DNA of 63,739 nt, counting the filler, from Reticulomyxa filosa (taxonomy: Eukaryota > Protista > Foraminifera): assembly GCA_000512085.1 (NCBI GenBank). It is 21 parts of 21 records of this genome, joined end to end, with 100 filler letters (N's around TTAATTAATTAA, not from the genome) between each part and the next. Parts side by side here need not be neighbours in the genome. Positions count along the whole stretch, not along the records: positions 11,576 to 23,615 come from ASPP01004436.1; 20 more parts are not named here. One strand, 5' to 3'. The translations under genes and the position numbers were made by a program. Under the pieces are notes generated by a model. The model made no database searches. It saw only the letters and a program-made list of their open reading frames with translations, and was not told the DNA's origin. This document shows, one piece after another, positions 11,646-48,419 of the stretch. Each line of letters starts with the position of its first letter. Positions within the stretch are counted from its first letter, which is position 1.

Positions 11646-12558
11646 GATTCAATTCGATGATATGTCGAACAAGACATGAAGAGAAGGACAGCACAGTAAC
11701 ATATATGGGCTTGCTTGGCAAAGTGATATGGCCCTGCTTTTTATGGGGCAGCGGAACTGCAATTGGAGAAATTCCTCCTTATGCGGTCAGTCTTGCAGCG
11801 TCGCGGGCAGGGAAATACAATGAACAACAATGGGCTGAAACGAGTGCAAACCATTGGATCGATCACATGAAAAAACAAATGATTCATTTTTTAAGCAAAT
11901 ATGGATTTTGGGCTGTTTTGGCATTTGCTGCATATCCTAATATGGCCTTTGATATGTGTGGGTAGGTGTTAGATATCTTATGTGATTGTTGCCATATACA
12001 AAAAAAAATGATTGTTTGTATAATAAAAGAATTGCATGTGGACATTTTCAAATGCCTTTTTGGAAATTCTTTGGAGCTACTTTCATTGGAAAAGCATTAA
12101 TTAAAGTGAATCTTCAAGCTATGTTTTTCATTGTGGTATTTCATCAACATACTTTAAATTGGGTTATTCATCAAATTCATAGATGTAGATTGCCATCATT
12201 TGCTCGACAAGTTCAACTTTTTGTTGAAATGCAAAGAAAAGCTTTGATTGAAACAGATCAATCTAATTTACAAAAACAGGTTATATACATATATACATAT
12301 ATATTTGTATATGTATATATATAGTATCATTTACTTCATTTCGTTTTATTTTGTTCACAGACTTCTTTTTTGAAAATAATATGGACAATTGTAATATGGA
12401 TATTTATGCTCGTTTTTATTGGGTCTGTCATTCAAGCTTTTGCTCAACAAAAACAAAAAGAGATTGATGACAAAATCAACGAGGAATGGCTAAATACAAG
12501 TCAACATCAAAATCCAGAATATCAAACAATAATAGTTGATAATGAAAAAGATAAATGA
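11646..12558 (+). CDS. VMP1: Vacuole membrane protein 1 (VMP1/TMEM49), 3' part; introns 11962-12029 and 12280-12360
   Basis: LWGSGTAIGEIPPY, YGFWAVLAFAAYPNMAFDMCG|IACGHFQMPFWKFFGATFIGKALIK are VMP1 family motifs. Confidence 0.93.
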
Positions 12559-15500
12559 AACTAATGTTGCCTATTTTGAAATAAGATTTAGCAGTGTCGT
12601 TTTTTTTAAAATTGTTTTAATAAAATCGTCTAAATGTATCGATGATCATATGTTGTAATGTTGTTCTTCTCTTGAATGTGTAAAAATAAAAACAATTCCA
12701 AGTCAATAAATTCTTTCGTGTAGTTGATATAAAAAAAAGGGGTTGGTCATATAAAAAAAAAAATGTTCAGCGGAAAATAGTCAAACTGTGACATTAATCT
12801 AGATTAGACGTGTGAACGGGTTTTTGGAGCCGACAAGGAGACGTTAACAGAAGTAACAATATCACAAAATAAATTTCTTGAACAAAAAAACACAGACCAA
12901 CAGAGAACTTGGAAATATGTTGTATATTTCAAAAAAAAATTTTTTGTTAACTTGTGCGAAAGAAGAGCGATGGAGTAAGAACAATCATACTATTGACATG
13001 TGATGATAAATTTAACTATTTTTTTGGAGTGTGTGGATGGAGTTGCAATTGATGAAACTAACTCACACTAAACAAAAAAATGAGAAATGTATTCTGAAAG
13101 CAGTGTTTGACGAAGCAAAACATTTGTTTAAATGAAGAGTTTAACAGTTGCAAAAGAAGTTGAAACTTTATCTTGGAAAACATTGAAAGTAGAAATTAAT
13201 ATTGTATTTAAAATAAAGTGGCATTAAGGCTTGATTCTAAGTGCTCAAGAGAGTAAAAAGTTTTTTACTTCTTACAACCTTTTTAATTAAAATTGCAACA
13301 TTTTGAAAGATAATGTCTGACATGCTTCTTTTCTTTACTGACTCATGGCGTTGTAATGTGTGATTGCTGTATGATCTTGTGGAAACAAAGCAGTGACAAG
13401 CATGTTTTGCTGGCATTCTTCGAATGTGCTGACGAAGACACTTGAACGATCAATAAAAACATGTTCGCAAGCAGTAAGAAGGCGTTGCGTTCGAGTGACG
13501 ACACATATTACACTGACGACTTGATTAACTCTAATGATATGTTCAAATACTTGTACCAGCTGATAAACTAGCGAATAATAATTTGGATTGACAATGATAA
13601 TAACGATATAAAAGTATTGTTTGACATAGGAGAAATTTCGTGGACAACACTTTCAAGCGAATCAAAGATTTTGAAAGAAAGCGATGATTTGTTATGTTTG
13701 ATGCAGTCAAAGATAATTAAGTGCATTTACTTCAACTATTTGAAAGGTGATGCGATTATCGAAACTATAAATTTAAATGCTAATGCAATCTAGTTGTATG
13801 ATTACGACATGGCTTGTTTGTTGTGTTTTATTATTATTTGAAATTTTTTTTTGAAAAAAAATTGTTGTGAATATTCCTTTAAAAAAATTTAATTACAATG
13901 GAAGAAGATACATTCAACAATTTGTTTATCATGTACACAATTTCATTTTTTATAAAAGGTATATGATATCAAATTTGATGAGGTGAAACTGGCGAAGAAA
14001 GCATTAGCACAAATGTAAAAACTAAACGCGACTGTTGGTCTATAGTGCCGTTGGTCCAACAAATAAACAATGCTGATCTCGACTAATGCTGAAGGTAATG
14101 TGCTTTTATATCAAAGTTTATAGTATAATATTTGAATTAGCTCCAAAATGAAAAGTAGTTACATTTATATACAATATAATGCAAATGAAAGTTGACCACA
14201 TTATATAGATAATTGATCTTCTTCACGAAAAACAACATATATACATAATTTTTTTTTATTTTAAAAAATATATACGAATAGTGTAGTTTTTTGTATATGC
14301 AAACAAGTCAAGTTAATTCAAAAGTTTAAAAACTGAAAATTTTTTTGTGAGTGAAAATTATCATTTGATTAAATTACTTTTGCCCTTATAATGCTTGTAT
14401 TCGATCTGCATTGATCATGTTAAGTTTGTACATGTTTATTTGTCAATTTTTTATATTTAATTCAAATTGTTTGCAAAGTTCTTTTTTTGATCTGAATGGT
14501 CCGTTTTTGTATATTTTTGTTTACGCTATCCACAACAGATTTCCAAGTAAGTTTATGCAGGTATAGTTTGAATGGAAATTCAATATTTTGATATCGTTTT
14601 GTTCAAACTATTCATTTAATGTAATTACTGTGTGGCTAGTGGCATTATCTTGCTGAAATATATAATTTTCATTATCTTCTAACACAAATCAATGCTTTTA
14701 TGCATTTAATCAAATAGAATTTCTTTGTATATATGCATTGACACTCAATCAATTTTTCAGCATACACAGGTCATAACATTCCAAAACAAGACAAAAAATT
14801 ATATTTCAGCAATTAAATTTTGATGTTTTTATGATTGCATTTTCGGTAAGTTGTGCTAATGATATCTTATAAGTATGATGACTTCTATAAATACCTTTTA
14901 AATTAATTTACTTTCATCAGAAAAAAATACTTTTTTCAAATCATTGAATGTCAATTCATTGAACCTTTTTGTAGTCATTAAGTCATTTTTAAAAAAATAA
15001 AAAGATTAAAAATATTAAATATTGAACTGTACTGAACTAAAAAAAAAGAAAGAAAAAAGGATAAAATATTGAAATAATTATAATAAAAAACCAAAATGAT
15101 ATTTAAAAATTACGCGATTCGTATGATTTAAAAAGTAAGTCATGACGTTGTTTTTTCATGAAGAAAATCAATTATCTCAATAATGTGCCGTTTTAGATGT
15201 CAACTTTACTTTGCATTATACTGTGTTTTGATTTAATTAGTGAAGTTTACTTATGTCTTATTAGCTGTGTCTACTTCAATGAATAAACAAATACTTTTGC
15301 ATTGTATAACTCTTTACTAGTTGTACATTAATGACAGTGGTTTTTTGTCATTTTATTCTAAGCAGAAAATGAATTGGTATTATCATTGCAACAGCGATGA
15401 TTTGCAATTGTTGACACATAGTAGCCACAATCAAGACTTTTAAATTATTATCCTTTTAATTTTTTCTTTTTTTAATTGAAAATCCTTTTTGATTGATAGG

Positions 15501-15654
15501 AAAAAAATTCAAACAACTCGGTCAAAAGAGAGCTAAAAGAACGTCTACTTTTATAATGAAAAACAAATTTTAGCACAAAGATCATTTGTAAGCTTTATTT
15601 AATTTTTCAAAAAGCTATTTGTCTTTAAGTTTTCCGTTCATTGTATTTGTATGT

Positions 15655-15792
15655 GATTTGTTGGATCAGTCAGATTCAAGTATTCACTTGGCATACAAAG
15701 TGAGCGAATGCTGTTGAATATTCACCATTTGTAGTTAGTAATAGCAAAATTGGTGGTAGTTCGAACGTGATATGTTCTGGATCAAGTGACAC
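15655..15792 (+). pseudogene. WD40-gene relic, inverted relative to the neighbouring WD40 gene
   Basis: Translates as QIQVFTWHTK*ANAVEYSPFVVSNSKIGGSSNVICSGSSD, matching QIQVFNGHTDNVNAVEYSPFVVNNSKVSCSSNVICSGSLD at ~16140-16260 (minus strand). Confidence 0.85.
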
Positions 15793-15931
15793 ATCAAATT
15801 AACAAATATATCAACAACTTTTTATCATAGTAACTAAAGCAAATATATTCAACTCCATTTAAAACAAATGAATTTAGTCCTTTCACTGGCAAGAATTGCA
15901 ACAAATCTAAACAAAGACTTTATCACTACAT

Positions 15932-17340
15932 TCATCCCCAAGCGCGAATGGGGCCGTTGTGCGAGCCGTAAAATAAATTAATAATACAATCTCCATTTGT
16001 TTTTTTATTGTTATGTCCTTTGTTTCTCAATGATAAAAATTTAAGACAAAATATTCCATCATCTTCATTTCCATTTCCTTTGATAATGTGCAATTCTTTC
16101 TTATTTGATCGAATATCCCAAAAACGAATTGTGTTATCCAATGATCCGGAACATATCACATTTGAACTACAACTAACTTTGCTATTGTTAACTACAAATG
16201 GCGAATATTCAACAGCATTCACATTATCTGTATGTCCATTGAACACTTGAATTTGTTGAGTAGAACGAATATCCCATAAACGAACACTACAATCACGTGA
16301 TCCAGATAATATTGTATTTGCACAGCCAATATTTCCTATTTCATTTGATCCATATTTTACACTCCTAATCCAACTTTTATGTCCTTTGAATATAATTAAT
16401 TGTTTAGTTGTTTCAATATCCCATATACGAATGGTGTCATCAAACGATCCAGAGCAGATTGTATAACCACTACCACCAATCACACCAATAATATTACTGT
16501 TATTGTTATTACTTTGCAGTGGTGCAATATCTACACACCAAACACCAGCTTCATGCCCCTTGAAAACATACAATGATTTGGATATTTCAACATCCCATAG
16601 ACGAATAGTATTGTCACATGATCCAGAGCACAAATATCTACCACCATTAAATGTTGAGAATTCAATACCACAGACAATATTCGTGTGTTCATTGAAAATT
16701 TGAAATTGTTTATCATCTTTGAAATCCCAAAAACGAATGTTGTCGTCATTTGATGAAGAACAAATGACATTACGGCTGTAATTATAAAAATGATATTGTG
16801 AAAATTTTACGCAATTTACACAATCTAAATGTCCATTAAATAATTGAACTTGTTTGTTGGCGTGTACGTCCAATACACAAACAGTTTTATCTTCTGATCC
16901 AGAACAAATAAATTGATTACCATCGAATATTGAGTAATCAATACTATTCACACAACATGTGTGTCCAGTGAACGTTTTGAGTAATTTAGATGATGAACGA
17001 AATGTATCAAGCATGAATAAAATCGTCGTCTGTGTTAAATTGTGATTATAAATGATACCATAAATAAATATTTGCCATTAAACAAAATAGAAAACAAAAA
17101 AATCATAACATAATTGACAACAATTTTGTCAAAATCATTGATCCAGCCTAATTTGATGTTTAATATTCGAGTCCAATGCCGAATGATTATCTGAATCTCT
17201 TCTTTTCCTGACTGATTTAGTTACAAATCACAAATGCAATAATGCAAAAACCTGAAGACAGCTTGCTTTCAGAAAGACTGAAGTAAAACTTACCAATGCC
17301 AGTTGCATTGAATTTTTTTTTCATTGCTAAAAGTGGTCAT
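15932..17340 (-). CDS. WD40-repeat protein with N-terminal HWxR module; exons ~17294-17340, 17110-17211, 15932-17029
   Basis: About 7 GH...WD repeats in a 360-aa open frame; upstream exon SGKEEIQIIIRHWTRILNIKLGWINDFDKIVVNY with canonical splice sites. Confidence 0.92.
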
Positions 17341-17658: not shown

Positions 17659-19851
17659 TTACAATGGTATCCACAATTGAATTGTTTCATTAGAGCATGA
17701 TATAATTTTATTCCCATCTGGGGAAATATCCGTACATGTTATATTTTTAGGCGAATGTAGTTTTTGCATTTCTACTCCTAATTGAACATCCCACAATTGT
17801 ATTGCACAATATTCTAAGCCTAATACAGTCTGTTTATCTGGAAAATATTTCACATCGTACAGTTCATCAGAGCGAAATTCTTTTACTTTTGTTTTTGATG
17901 CTACATCCCATATTTCAACTGACCACTTGATGGATTAGATATAATAGAAAAATTATGATAGTTTATATTTGTTTCTTCACCTGATTTGATATCAATAATC
18001 AAAATTGTGCTATCTTGTCTCAATATAATAATTTGTTGACCATTTGGTGAAAATGTTATACTTTGTACATCAGTCAAATTGTTTAATATTTGAATCTCTT
18101 GTCCAGATTGTATGTCCCATACTCTTATTGTGTTATCATTTGATGCAGACACTATAATCATACCATCTGAAGAAAATTGTACAGTCCGTACATTATCTGT
18201 ATGTCCTTCCAATTTTTTGACTTCAATACCAGATTTTACATCCCACAAACGAATAGTTTTGTCATTTGAACAGGATATAATCATAGTTCCATCTGGTGAA
18301 AATTGTGCTTCACAAACACGTTCAAAATGCCCTTTTAATTCTTTAGTGTTAACTTCATTTGCTGAGCTAACATCCCATATTTGAATTATATTCTCTTCTG
18401 ATGTTCTAACAAATGTACGACCATCTGGTGAAAATTTTACAGTTTTCAGATATTTTCCTTCATAATTAATTACTCTTAAAAGCCTAAAATATTTCAACTA
18501 TTATATATTATGATAATTATAATATTGTTTATTATTTATAGTAAAAATATACATAAGAAATAATCATACCAAAATATATTTTGAAATAATAGTACTGAAA
18601 TCATTAATCCATCCAATCTTTACAGATAATATTCGATTCCAATGTTCAAGTATAGTCTTTATTTCTTTTTTTTTCTATTCATAAAAAGTATATTTATATT
18701 ATGTAAAAAAATATAAAAATAAGATGATAACTCTATTTAACATTTTGATTTGAAAATTTGAATTTGCTTCTTTCATTTGTTCAATTGTTATCTTTTCTTC
18801 TTCTTCTGCTATTTTTTGTCTTTCTTTTTCTTTATTTATTTCTACTATCTCTTTTATATTCGTTTTTATATGTATTGAGCAATGAAAATCATTATAATAA
18901 CCATCTAAAATATGTACAAAATTATCATTTAATGTTGCAACACAACAGCTTAATGGAATAGGTAACGTTTGTTCAATTGTTAAACATCTTTCTTCTGATA
19001 TAATGTATTTATATATTTTATTTGAAATATCTTTATTTGAAATACAAGTGGAATAAAAAGTATTATTATTTGAAACACCATTCCATCCACCAAAAAAAAA
19101 AAATCATTAATATGAACATAAGCATAATAATTAATTGATGTAAGTTTTGAAAGAATATATATTTTGCGAAATTCAAATTTATTAATATTTTCATTATAGA
19201 TAATTGATAATATTGTTTCATAACAAAATAATAACATTTCATTATTTTCATTGTTTTTTATAAAACAATGATGATGAATATTATAATCTGTTGGTAAAAT
19301 ACTATGATTAATATATCGATATGTATTTAAATTAAATACATCAATATTATTTGGATAATATGTTATAAATAATAAATTGTTTTTTTTTCCACCTATTACT
19401 GCACGCATTCCATCATAATTATCTTTTTTTCTTCCAATATATACTTTGTTATTATTATTGTCAATTAATGGTAACCATTTATTTGTAAATCTTGTTTTTT
19501 TTATTTTAATAATATCTTCGCTTTTATTTGTATGTTCATCTTCATCCCAAACACTTATATAATCCATAATTAACGTATGTTTTTTATAACCACCAAAAGA
19601 TAATAATGTAAACCATTTTTATTCTTTGACCATTTTAATACACAATGTCCTTGTAATTCAACATTATTTGGATAATAATGTATAGTTTTGTATTCATTTT
19701 TGAGTATGTGATAGGAATAACAATTCCTTTCTTCGAAACCTCCACAAATTAATATTTCTGAATTATATCTTAAGCATTGACCTTGAAAAATTGGATGTGG
19801 CAAAGAGCCCAGAGTTTCAAAAGAAAGAATTGATGTAGCTTGAGTTGCCAC
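17659..19851 (-). pseudogene. Kelch-like propeller + charged helix + HWxR module + WD40 propeller fusion, frameshifted
   Basis: Kelch-like ILICGG..CYSY, LLSFGG, VIGG, FFGGW blades; EKERQKIAEEEE helix; exon 18570-18674; WD40 repeats LKGHFERV..FSPDG..IRLWD. Frameshifts near 19610, 19095 and 17920; no in-frame ATG seen at the 5' end. Confidence 0.8.
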
Positions 19852-20476: not shown

Positions 20477-21894
20477 TTAAAGAATTATTGGCATCAAATC
20501 CAAATAAGATCCTTCCTCACCCCAAAACCGAATATGACCCTTGTATGAACCATAGCTCAAATAAATATCACAACCACGATCATAGTTGCTTTCTCTTTTC
20601 TTTCTCAATTTTAAAAATTTAAGACAATGTATTTCACCGTCTCCATCTCCTTCAAGTACATGTAATTCCTTCTTATTTGATCGAATATCCCAAAAACGGA
20701 TTGTCATATCACTTGATCCAGAACATATCACATTTGAATTACTACCAATTTCATTATTTTTTAACACAAATGGTGAATACTCAACAGCATTCACATAATC
20801 TGTATGCCCATTGAATGTTTGAATCTGTTGATCGGATCGAATGTCCCACAAACGAACGCTGCTATCATTTGATCCAGATAATATTGTATTTGCAGCACCA
20901 TTATTTCCAATTGTATTTGATCCATATTTTACACTAGTCACATCATTGTCATGTCCTTTGAATACAGTCAATTGTTTAGTTGTTTCAATATCCCATATAC
21001 GAAATTGTTGTGTCTCTTGATCCAGAACAAATAGTATATCCATTACCACCGATCACACCAATAATATTACTTTTATTACTGTTGTTATTGCTTTGTAATG
21101 ATGAAAAATCCACACACAACACAACGTTTGCATGTCCATTGAAAGTATGCGCTGTGTTGTATGTTTTAACATCCCATAAACGAATAGTATAGTCACAAGA
21201 TCCAGAGCACAAATATTGACCTCCATTAAATGGTGAGAATTCAATTCCTGTAACTTCATTAGTATGTCCTTTGACTACTTGCAATTTTCGATTATTCTTG
21301 ACATTTCCAAATCTAATGTTATTGTCAGATGACGAAAAACAAACGACTTGATGACGATGATGATAGTAATGATATGATGAAAATTTTACACAAGATACAT
21401 AGCTTGAATGTCTATTGAATGATTGAATTTGTTTCTTGGCTTCTACATCCCATACACTAACTGTTTTATCAAACGATCCTGAGCAAAGTAATTGACAGTC
21501 ATCGAATGTTAAAAAATCAATACTACTCACACAAAAGGTATGACCATGAGATACTCGGACTAGTCCGGATGATGAACAAAACGTATCAAATATGAAAACG
21601 GTGGTTGCCTGTGTTAAATAATGATTATGAATAAATTTTTATAATAGAATACAAAAAACATAACATAATCGACAACAAGTTTATCAAAATCATGGATCCA
21701 TCCTAATTTAGTGTTTACTGTTCGAGTCCAATGTTGGATAACCATTTGTGTCTCTTCTTTTTCAGACTGATTTAATCACAAAACAATATAATTAATAAAA
21801 TAAATACAACAGTGAAAACGAAATAAAACCAAATTACCAACGACAGTCGCGTTGAAGTTTCTTTTTTATCTCTTTTTTTAAAAAATGAAAACAT
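20477..21894 (-). CDS. WD40-repeat protein with HWxR module, paralog of 15932-17340; one frameshift at ~21003
   Basis: Exons 21838-21894, 21665-21766, 20477-21608. ORFs 20985-21530 and 20477-21049 join at DTTI/RIWD if one T is removed. Confidence 0.87.
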
Positions 21895-23743
21895 TCTTTC
21901 AATTTCTTATTTTTCTCTGATGACGAAAAATGTTTCTAAGGGTTTTCAAAAATCCTTTGACCTAGAAAGGCGAACAATATTTTTTTTAACGAACTAAAAA
22001 TTGTTTAAGTTGTCGTTTTGAGTGTAGTATTTAAAAAAGTCCATTTGATTAACATCCCCCTTAAATAAATTATTAAACATCATTTGTGGTATAACTGCAT
22101 AACAAAAATAAAAAATTCAAAAGGAAGCTGCTTCACAAAAAACAAAACAAGTTTTTTTTATTTAAAAATTAAACTACTAAAATTCAGCGTTAATAAATGG
22201 ATAATCAAAATACAGCTGAAAGACAAACCAAGCAAAATCTTACTCCATCAATTTTTTTCAAGGTTTGAACGATTCCTCAACTCACTTGTACTTCGACCCC
22301 CTTTAAAATTTGAAGGATTTTGTTGATATCAAATGTTTGGAACATTCAAATTCAATTAATTACTTTGTCTGGACCAAAAAAACTTTTACGCACATCTTTT
22401 ATGATGAACCAAGGAAAATGAAAAAATGTGAATTTTTGATTTTTTTGTTGGTCACTTTTTCGACATTCAATAAAAACAGTCTTAAAAGCCTGAAACATGA
22501 AAAAATGACATCTTTGAAGATTATCAATTTTTTTTTTATTGAAAATTAGTCTTTTAAAAATGTGTCAATCATGTGCTAATTTCTGAACTTACCGATATTA
22601 ATTTAAAAATTTGAAATGTAACTGTTCATGAACAATTTTGCAATAATTTATTGGTTTTCAAATTTATTGTGTAGGTCAAGCCATTATCACACATGGTTGA
22701 GCTCGTATTGAACTGATGAGCTACCTTTGGGTTAAACTTCATCAGTTAACTAATTCTTACTTCATTGTTTTTCTTACTTTCCTTTTTGTCATTATTCTCT
22801 TTAATTTACTTTCCTTTTACTGAAATTGTTCTTTTGGAACTAAATTCCTTTCGTATTACATTTAGTGCAGTTCTCCACAGTAGACTCCCCACAATGGTGT
22901 TGTTGCATTTTAATTATTTTATCAGAAAAGCAATACTTGAGAAAATTGTTTCTGGTATCACGTGTAAACATAATTTATATTTGCATTGAAAAGAAGAAAC
23001 AGAAAATTATTTTTTGTCAAAGTTATCCATAGATTACATGCAATGATTGCAGGAGCATTAAGCAAAATTAAATGTAATACGAAAGTGGCTTTATTCCGGA
23101 AACTAATTTTTAGTAAAATGAAAAAAATTAAATAATAGAAAAATTAAAAAACAGAAACGCAAGACTTTTGGTTGAAATGAAGCGAAAAGGTTCTGGGGAC
23201 AATGCCCAAGTCCGTTCCACTTCAGTAACAATTGGCAGTAGATTACCCTACAGCCTTGTATATGTCAATAATTTACTTTGTACAGACTTTTTCAAACGAA
23301 TTGCGATATGTAGTTATTGCAACAACAGTAAAAACAAACTATGAAAAAAAACTAAATAAACATGCTTTGAAGTCTTTCAGAAGTATTGTTCATCGCAAAA
23401 AAATATTGTTTGATTGTCACCTTTTTCATGTATTTGTTCCATTATCTTTGATCCCGACGATATGATGTCCAGTTCTGACAGTACAGTATGTTGCAAAGAA
23501 AACTGAACGCCTAAAAACGATATCTTATGATAATAATTGATTTTCTCAATGAAAAAATCAACATTTAGACCTAATTTTTTTTTAAAAATATCTACAAATC
23601 TTGCAGTTTTTAAATNNNNNNNNNNNNNNNNNNNNNNNNNNNNNNNNNNNNNNNNNNNNTTAATTAATTAANNNNNNNNNNNNNNNNNNNNNNNNNNNNN
23701 NNNNNNNNNNNNNNNAAAAAAAAAAAAAAAAACAAAATTGGAA

Positions 23744-47632: not shown

Positions 47633-48419
47633 TCATTGTCATTATGCTTTGCAATGGTGAAATATCAACAGAAAAAACAGTATCTTTATGTCCATTGAAA
47701 ACATGTAATGATTTGGATGTCTTAACATCCCATAAACGAATAGTGTTGTCAAGTGATCCAGAACACAAATATCTACCACAATGAAATGATGAAAATTTAA
47801 TACCATAAACACTGCTAGAGTGTCCATTGAGTATTTGTAATTTTCTGTTATGTTTAATATCCAAAAAACGAATGATTTTATCACATGATGAAGAACAAAT
47901 GACATTTTGATGATGATTGTGATAATGATATTGTGAAAATTTCACACAAGTTACAGCGCTTAAATGGTAGCTCGATAATTGAATTTGTTTGTTGTTTTCA
48001 ACATTCCATACACAAACTGTTCTATCATATGATCCAGAACAAATAAATTGATCCCCATCAAATGTTGAACAATCAATACTATACACCCAATTGGTATGTC
48101 CATTGAATGTATTAAGTAATTTGAATGATGAACAAAAGTTATCAAGCATGAACACATTAGATGCCTATGTTGATAAATATTTAAATATTTCGATTGGCAC
48201 TAAATGAAAGAAAAACAAAAATCATAACATAATTGGCAACGAATTTGTCAAAGCCATTGATCCATCCAAATTTAATATTTAATATTCGAATCCAATGATG
48301 GATAATTATTTGAGTTTCTTCTTCTTTTGACTGTTTTAATCATAAAGCAAAAAAAAGATAAATAGATAAATACCTAAAGATAAACTTGAACACACTTTCA
48401 TTGATAAGTTTAAGCTCAT
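47633..48419 (-). CDS. WD40-repeat protein with HWxR module (exon 48229-48330), 3' end off contig
   Basis: SKEEETQIIIHHWIRILNIKFGWINGFDKFVANY then FMLDNFCSSFKLLNTFNGH..., collinear with 15932-17340. Confidence 0.88.

What the first reader, a model, noticed from the sequence alone, without database searches (positions are those of the whole stretch)
17110..17211. Single-exon 'HWxR' module shared by an expanded beta-propeller family: candidate adaptor box of a diversified receptor system
Seen: a ~34-aa motif, EE(I/T)QxIIxHWxRxLNxKxGWIxDFDKxVxxY, is encoded on its own exon in four genes. The exon is 102 nt at 17110-17211, 21665-21766 and 48229-48330, and 105 nt at 18570-18674. It reads in frame from first to last base (phase 0-0), and a fifth relic lies at ~48945. 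Four of the five propeller genes carry it; the fifth has its 5' end off the contig. Established: a short conserved helical box plus a variable WD40 or Kelch propeller is the design of F-box, SOCS-box and BTB cullin-ligase substrate receptors, which expand by birth-and-death evolution. Inference: the W-I-x-D-F-x-x-I-V-x-x-Y half loosely echoes the F-box/cullin-box L-P-x-E-I-x-x-x-I-x-x-Y pattern, so this may be a lineage-specific E3 adaptor box on a shuffle-ready exon that feeds a large recognition repertoire, perhaps for defence or self/non-self recognition. I know of no characterised domain matching it, but I could not search.
Basis: partly seen in the sequence, partly recalled or inferred. 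Interest (0 to 1): 0.8.

Follow-up and report, generated by a model that had tools for sequence, protein, structure and literature searches.

The report
Foraminiferan receptor docking exon
A giant amoeboid protist attaches the same short, conserved, undescribed protein tag, on its own exon, to hundreds of fast-varying binding proteins; it probably plugs them into one shared machine such as a protein-destruction (ubiquitin) ligase, but that partner is not identified.

Summary
The piece is Reticulomyxa filosa contig ASPP01004436.1. All three propeller genes in it carry the 34-35 aa module on an AG/GT-flanked, phase 0-0 exon. The profile hits 206 protein clusters; all hits that could be identified are R. 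filosa. The module precedes two different WD40 classes, ends Kelch proteins, or sits between Kelch and WD40. It lies outside the propeller in the model, so it is not a closing strand. It is under purifying selection (omega about 0.4), while WD40 top-face sites are hypervariable (3.1 versus 1.0 bits). No Pfam, PDB or Atlas family matches. The F-box echo failed: profile comparison scored at shuffle level and there is no proline. It shares only the hydrophobic register of BC-box/Cul2-box motifs; the strict consensus is met in 0-1 of 104. Best reading: an undescribed docking box for a diversified receptor repertoire, most likely feeding a cullin-type ligase (about 0.5). No binding partner was tested, and no RNA was available to confirm splicing.

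The parts
17110..17211 (-). HWxR module exon of gene A (34 aa), phase 0-0
21665..21766 (-). HWxR module exon of gene C (34 aa), phase 0-0
18570..18674 (-). HWxR module exon of gene B (35 aa), phase 0-0, between Kelch/coiled coil and WD40 class B
17294..17308 (-). Gene A short leader exon (in-frame ATG at 17308; the family-typical ATG at 17340 is one base out of frame across an A run); intron 17212-17293
15932..17029 (-). Gene A WD40 class A exon, open 365 codons, 7-bladed propeller family; intron 17030-17109
21838..21894 (-). Gene C leader exon (19 aa); intron 21767-21837
20477..21608 (-). Gene C WD40 class A exon with a frame switch near 20991-21007 (pseudogene or assembly error); intron 21609-21664
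18732..19851 (-). Gene B Kelch-like propeller plus charged coiled-coil-like tail; GTG at the presumed start and frame switches (one near 19615-19630); intron 18675-18731
17659..18497 (-). Gene B WD40 class B exon with a frame switch near 17930-17970; intron 18498-18569

Best explanation
The exon encodes an autonomous two-helix docking box. It couples many variable beta-propellers (two WD40 classes and a Kelch class) to one shared partner. Shown: autonomy, position independence, purifying selection on the box, and hypervariable ligand faces on WD40 class A. Inferred: each propeller binds a different target, and the box recruits a common machine, most likely a cullin-RING ubiquitin ligase through an Elongin C/Skp1-type adaptor that co-diverged in this lineage, so bound targets are ubiquitylated. 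The repertoire grew by a few domain fusions and then birth-and-death duplication.
For: Architectures among 150 cluster representatives: box-WD40A 61, box-WD40B 30, Kelch-box 16, Kelch-box-WD40B 11, no partner recognised 33. The phase-0 acceptor lies 11-12 codons before the Trp in every class, and the donor 0 or 6 nt after the Tyr codon where a WD40 follows. It is helix-linker-helix outside a complete propeller in the full-length model, with conserved residues on one face of each helix. Box omega 0.40, 2dlnL 32.4 against omega=1. Top-face entropy 3.07 versus 0.96 bits, P=9e-11; pN 0.58 versus gene-wide pS 0.36. Kelch plus C-terminal box is the layout of KLHDC2/3/10 (PMC10591846), and KLHDC10 is the second-best PDB hit of the Kelch profile, E=7e-9. 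The same WD40A clade can instead carry a RING-like/TRAF zinc finger plus coiled coil. The hydrophobic register fits BC-box then Cul2-box (52/104 and 101/104 with relaxed patterns).
Against: No strict box consensus is met: BC-box 0/104, Cul2-box 1/104, Cul5-box 0/104, F-box LPxE 0/104. The relaxed patterns were written after seeing the module, and any amphipathic helix fits such a register. The Kelch+module profile did not extend into the KLHDC boxes. The module's structure is unresolved: pLDDT 46-63 in context, and one long helix (pTM 0.44) alone. No complex could be modelled, and the presence of Elongin C, Cul2 or divergent Skp1 in R. filosa was not checked. An ML test on the 18 top-face codons was unstable and did not exceed omega=1. 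RING/TRAF replacements are rare (2 of 51 module-less proteins).
Confidence: 0.5

Rival explanations
1. The module is a dimerisation or signalling adaptor (LisH-like, or a death-fold-like role). It oligomerises ligand-bound propellers or links them to caspase/TRAF/NACHT-type effectors of an innate-immunity-like system, without a cullin.
For: The first helix fits a loose LisH helix-1 pattern in 65/104. LisH plus WD40 or Kelch is a common layout (own knowledge: LIS1, TBL1, muskelin). The same Kelch family is joined to a caspase domain in one annotated gene model on L081. Hypervariable WD40 faces are the mark of fungal HET-E/HNWD non-self sensors (PMC12222747).
Against: Strict LisH pattern 0/104; no Pfam LisH hit in 104 members. 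No NACHT-module-WD40 architecture was seen beyond one weak NACHT hit (P0246, E=0.005).
Confidence: 0.3
2. The module is a structural hinge of an ancestral Kelch-module-WD40B gene. It was carried along passively when either propeller was lost or swapped and has no partner of its own.
For: The module tree is clustered by partner class, and WD40B carriers are the most diverse. All identified carriers come from one genome.
Against: It is kept at the free C-terminus of Kelch-only proteins and at the free N-terminus of WD40-only proteins with the same near-invariant residues, under purifying selection in both (NG dN/dS 0.29 and 0.41). It lies upstream of 11 of 12 genomic WD40A exons, two of them partial.
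Confidence: 0.1
3. It is a divergent but true F-box or PRANC-like box that binds canonical Skp1.
For: The second half can be laid by eye on L-P-x-E-I-x3-I-x2-Y. A proline-containing look-alike with the same spacing precedes an ankyrin array in a Bacteroidetes MAG protein (L087).
Against: hhalign against nine viral F-box(-like) sequences, themselves picked by that pattern, scored 7.85 versus a shuffle mean of 8.3; 105 of 200 shuffles scored as high. Only 2 of 104 have any proline in the linker. The L087 similarity is not significant (hhalign E=0.17; rank 5 of 1142 windows).
Confidence: 0.1

Closest known systems
CRL2 receptors KLHDC2/KLHDC3/KLHDC10 (Kelch propeller + C-terminal BC-box/Cul2-box)
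   Same: Kelch propeller followed by a short C-terminal helical box; Kelch part hits KLHDC10 and KLHDC2 in PDB; similar hydrophobic register
   Different: Ile instead of Cys/Ala/Ser at BC-box +4, Glu/Lys instead of Ser/Thr/Pro at -1, no proline in the second half; the box itself does not align; it is also used N-terminally on WD40; hundreds of paralogues
F-box-WD40 / F-box-Kelch expansions (plants, nematodes)
   Same: Conserved short N-terminal module plus variable propeller, tandem clusters, broken copies, birth-and-death pattern
   Different: No LPxE motif, no Pfam or profile similarity, about 30 aa with two predicted helices, and C-terminal placement in Kelch proteins
SOCS-box proteins (e.g. 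WSB, ASB)
   Same: Short mobile box attached to several unrelated binding domains
   Different: No LPxP Cul5 box (0/104) and no BC-box consensus
Podospora HET-E/HET-D (HNWD) WD40 sensors
   Same: WD40 top-face positions hypervariable on a conserved scaffold (PMC12222747)
   Different: No NACHT or HET domain; variation is spread among hundreds of paralogues, and repeats within a gene are not homogenised
LisH-WD40/Kelch proteins (LIS1, TBL1, muskelin)
   Same: About 30-aa two-helix motif beside a propeller; loose match of the first helix
   Different: Second-helix LisH consensus absent; no Pfam hit

Membership tests
F-box | L-P-x-E/D-I motif | tested here: not met
   0/104
F-box | Profile similarity to F-box families | tested here: not met
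   No Pfam hit at E<=10; hhalign at shuffle level
F-box | Binds Skp1 | not testable with these tools
   No complex modelling or experiment available
VHL-box / SOCS-box | BC-box (S,T,P)Lxxx(C,S,A)xxx-hydrophobic (PMC4878042) | tested here: not met
   0/104 strict, 5/104 relaxed; register-only pattern 52/104
VHL-box | Cul2-box hydrophobic-P-xx-hydrophobic-xxx-hydrophobic (PMC4878042) | tested here: not met
   1/104; without the proline 101/104
SOCS-box | Cul5-box LPxP (PMC13342108) | tested here: not met
   0/104
VHL-box / SOCS-box | Three-helix fold bound to Elongin B/C | tested here: inconclusive
   Two helices at pLDDT 46-63 in context, a single helix alone; complex not modelled
LisH | Two-helix LisH consensus | tested here: not met
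   Strict 0/104, helix 1 only 65/104 (pattern from own knowledge); no Pfam hit
LisH | Homodimerisation | not testable with these tools
   Single-chain prediction only
Cullin-type substrate receptor design (works-like claim) | Short conserved module on several unrelated binding domains | tested here: met
   WD40A, WD40B and Kelch partners, N- and C-terminal
Cullin-type substrate receptor design (works-like claim) | Module purifying, binding face diversified | tested here: met
   omega 0.40; top-face entropy 3.07 bits; formal positive selection not proven
Propeller-closing (velcro) element | Supplies a strand to the last blade | tested here: not met
   Helical and outside the propeller; solved WD40s align to model residues ~55-415 only

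The most novel reading that the evidence does not exclude
An undescribed class of ligase-adaptor box that docks on a co-diverged adaptor protein and serves several hundred diversifying propeller receptors as an intracellular non-self recognition system in a giant multinucleate protist. It may be a derived form of a wider proline-containing motif that bacterial symbionts also place in front of ankyrin arrays (single lead, L087).
Probability: 0.25. Interest if true: 0.8.

Novelty: new variant of a known kind. Interest (0 to 1): 0.58.

Why it matters
The very large WD40/Kelch expansion of R. filosa is annotated in databases only by best-hit names. A shared conserved box plus hypervariable binding faces turns it into a testable receptor system: one 30-residue bait should identify the machine that hundreds of genes feed. 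If that is a cullin ligase, it adds a box type outside F-box, SOCS/VHL and BTB, and is a rare case of immune-like receptor diversification in Rhizaria.

Tried and rejected
Blank searches: Pfam on three exons and on 50 and 104 members; PDB by profile; ESM Atlas features (structure neighbours were generic helical hairpins); viral and metagenome scans; a DNA pattern scan of metagenomes gave 33 chance hits, many with stops and none resembling the module. The isolated AlphaFold model is a single helix, so I did not fold-search it. Fold searches with the full model report only the propeller. F-box homology was rejected. The proline-containing look-alike motif was recalled from memory; a pattern scan gave one credible instance (L087), but a homology search from it was blank and its similarity to the module is not significant. 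No RNA run was listed.

Full report
Observation. The three copies inside my piece are on the minus strand: 17110-17211, 21665-21766 and 18570-18674. Each has a (C/T)AG acceptor and a GT donor, is open end to end, and joins whole codons on both sides. The piece is Reticulomyxa filosa contig ASPP01004436.1. Gene A is leader-module-WD40 and looks intact from an ATG at 17308. Gene C has the same layout with one frame switch. Gene B is Kelch-like, coiled coil, module, then a different WD40 class, with several frame switches. No RNA run was listed, so splicing is inferred.

Family size and partners. The WD40 exon of gene A has 509 relatives at E<=1e-60, and the 120 listed are all R. filosa. Of these, 69 carry the module; 29 of the other 51 simply start at the propeller exon. 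In genomic DNA, 11 of 12 class A exons have the module upstream, two of them partial. A module profile against 1.84 billion representatives hit 206 clusters. Among the 150 shown, the module precedes WD40 class A (61) or class B (30), ends a Kelch protein (16), or sits between Kelch and class B (11); 33 had no recognised partner and look like mis-predicted fragments. Ten of the weakest listed hits are all R. filosa; 56 weaker hits were not visible. Viral and metagenome scans found no relative.

Exon structure. In all classes a phase-0 acceptor lies 33 or 36 nt before the Trp13 codon. The donor follows the Tyr34 codon directly or 6 nt later when a WD40 follows; in Kelch-only genes the module is the last exon and ends in a stop. 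A module tree is poorly resolved but clusters by partner (17 changes versus 57 shuffled). This fits a few fusions followed by expansion better than constant shuffling.

Structure. In a model of a natural full-length member (P0086), the module is helix-linker-helix at pLDDT 46-63 outside a complete seven-bladed propeller, and solved WD40 structures align only from about residue 55. Alone it collapses to one uninformative helix. Its conserved residues fall on one face of each helix. It is therefore not a propeller-closing element, but its fold is unresolved.

Selection. The module evolves under purifying selection: counting gives dN/dS 0.41 in the WD40A class and 0.29 in the Kelch class, and an MG model gives 0.40 with 2dlnL 32.4 against 1. 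WD40A top-face positions, defined by the standard repeat pattern, have mean entropy 3.07 bits against 0.96 for the rest (P=9e-11); I had noticed this variability in the consensus before defining the set. Their pN is 0.58 (0.52-0.63) against gene-wide pS 0.36 (0.33-0.40). An ML fit on these 18 codons was unstable and not above 1, and AT-rich codon bias can depress pS, so diversifying selection is likely but not proven. The pattern recalls Podospora HET-E sensors (PMC12222747).

What the box is. No Pfam, PDB or Atlas family matches. The F-box echo fails: no LPxE, and hhalign against natural viral F-boxes scores at the shuffle mean. Published BC-box, Cul2-box and Cul5-box patterns (PMC4878042, PMC13342108) are met by 0, 1 and 0 of 104, although the hydrophobic register fits a BC-box followed by a proline-less cullin box. 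The Kelch part is near KLHDC10/KLHDC2 in PDB, receptors with a C-terminal BC/Cul2 box (PMC10591846), but the alignment does not reach that box. Strict LisH is met by 0 of 104. Related propellers also occur with a RING-like/TRAF zinc finger and, in one annotated model, with a caspase domain. A proline-containing look-alike precedes an ankyrin array in a Bacteroidetes MAG, but the similarity is not significant and stays a lead.

Verdict. Shown: an autonomous, conserved, exon-bounded and undescribed module on three propeller classes, one with a hypervariable ligand face. Inferred: it docks these receptors on a shared machine, most likely a cullin-RING ligase via a diverged adaptor (0.5), otherwise a dimerisation or signalling scaffold (0.3), a passive hinge (0.1) or a true F-box (0.1). 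It works like a substrate-receptor box but is not a member of the F-box, SOCS/VHL or LisH families by any test run here. The genome paper was not available, so prior mention cannot be excluded.

Noticed in passing
window 15638-15793 (+): Fragment of a class A WD40 gene on the opposite strand, 82% like genes A and C, with no module detected: a relic of an inverted duplicate.
   Followed up: partly
window 11657-12558 (+): Spliced gene with a VTT domain (PF09335, 248 aa as annotated), unrelated to the propeller genes.
   Followed up: no
window 14156-14232, 15151-15239 and 23514-23557: Related AT-rich non-coding stretches in inverted orientation (36-44 nt arms, 77-89%), possibly ends of a small mobile element.
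   Followed up: no
window 17294-17340 (-): Family-typical leader exon of gene A is 47 nt, one base short across an A run: homopolymer error or recent decay; a downstream ATG is in frame.
   Followed up: partly
L081 7916-10471: Annotated R. filosa gene model joining the same Kelch family to a caspase (Peptidase_C14) domain, without the module, inside a WD40 cluster.
   Followed up: partly
L080 8051-9553 and 7512-7892: Class A WD40 exon preceded in one open frame by an unknown ~130-aa domain instead of the module; no Pfam match.
   Followed up: partly
L087 115-3630: AT-rich Bacteroidetes MAG (JAAGZN010000551.1) encodes a 1171-aa ankyrin protein with a short GYIR...IPPEI motif before the repeats, beside gyrB-like and resolvase-like genes; looks like a symbiont effector layout.
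   Followed up: partly
P0156 (annotated product, L001 1722-5715): The public annotation fuses genes C and B into one 1021-aa protein with two modules; probably a gene-prediction artefact.
   Followed up: partly
L080 3653-3745: A second, orphan module copy about 380 nt upstream of a complete module-WD40A gene.
   Followed up: no
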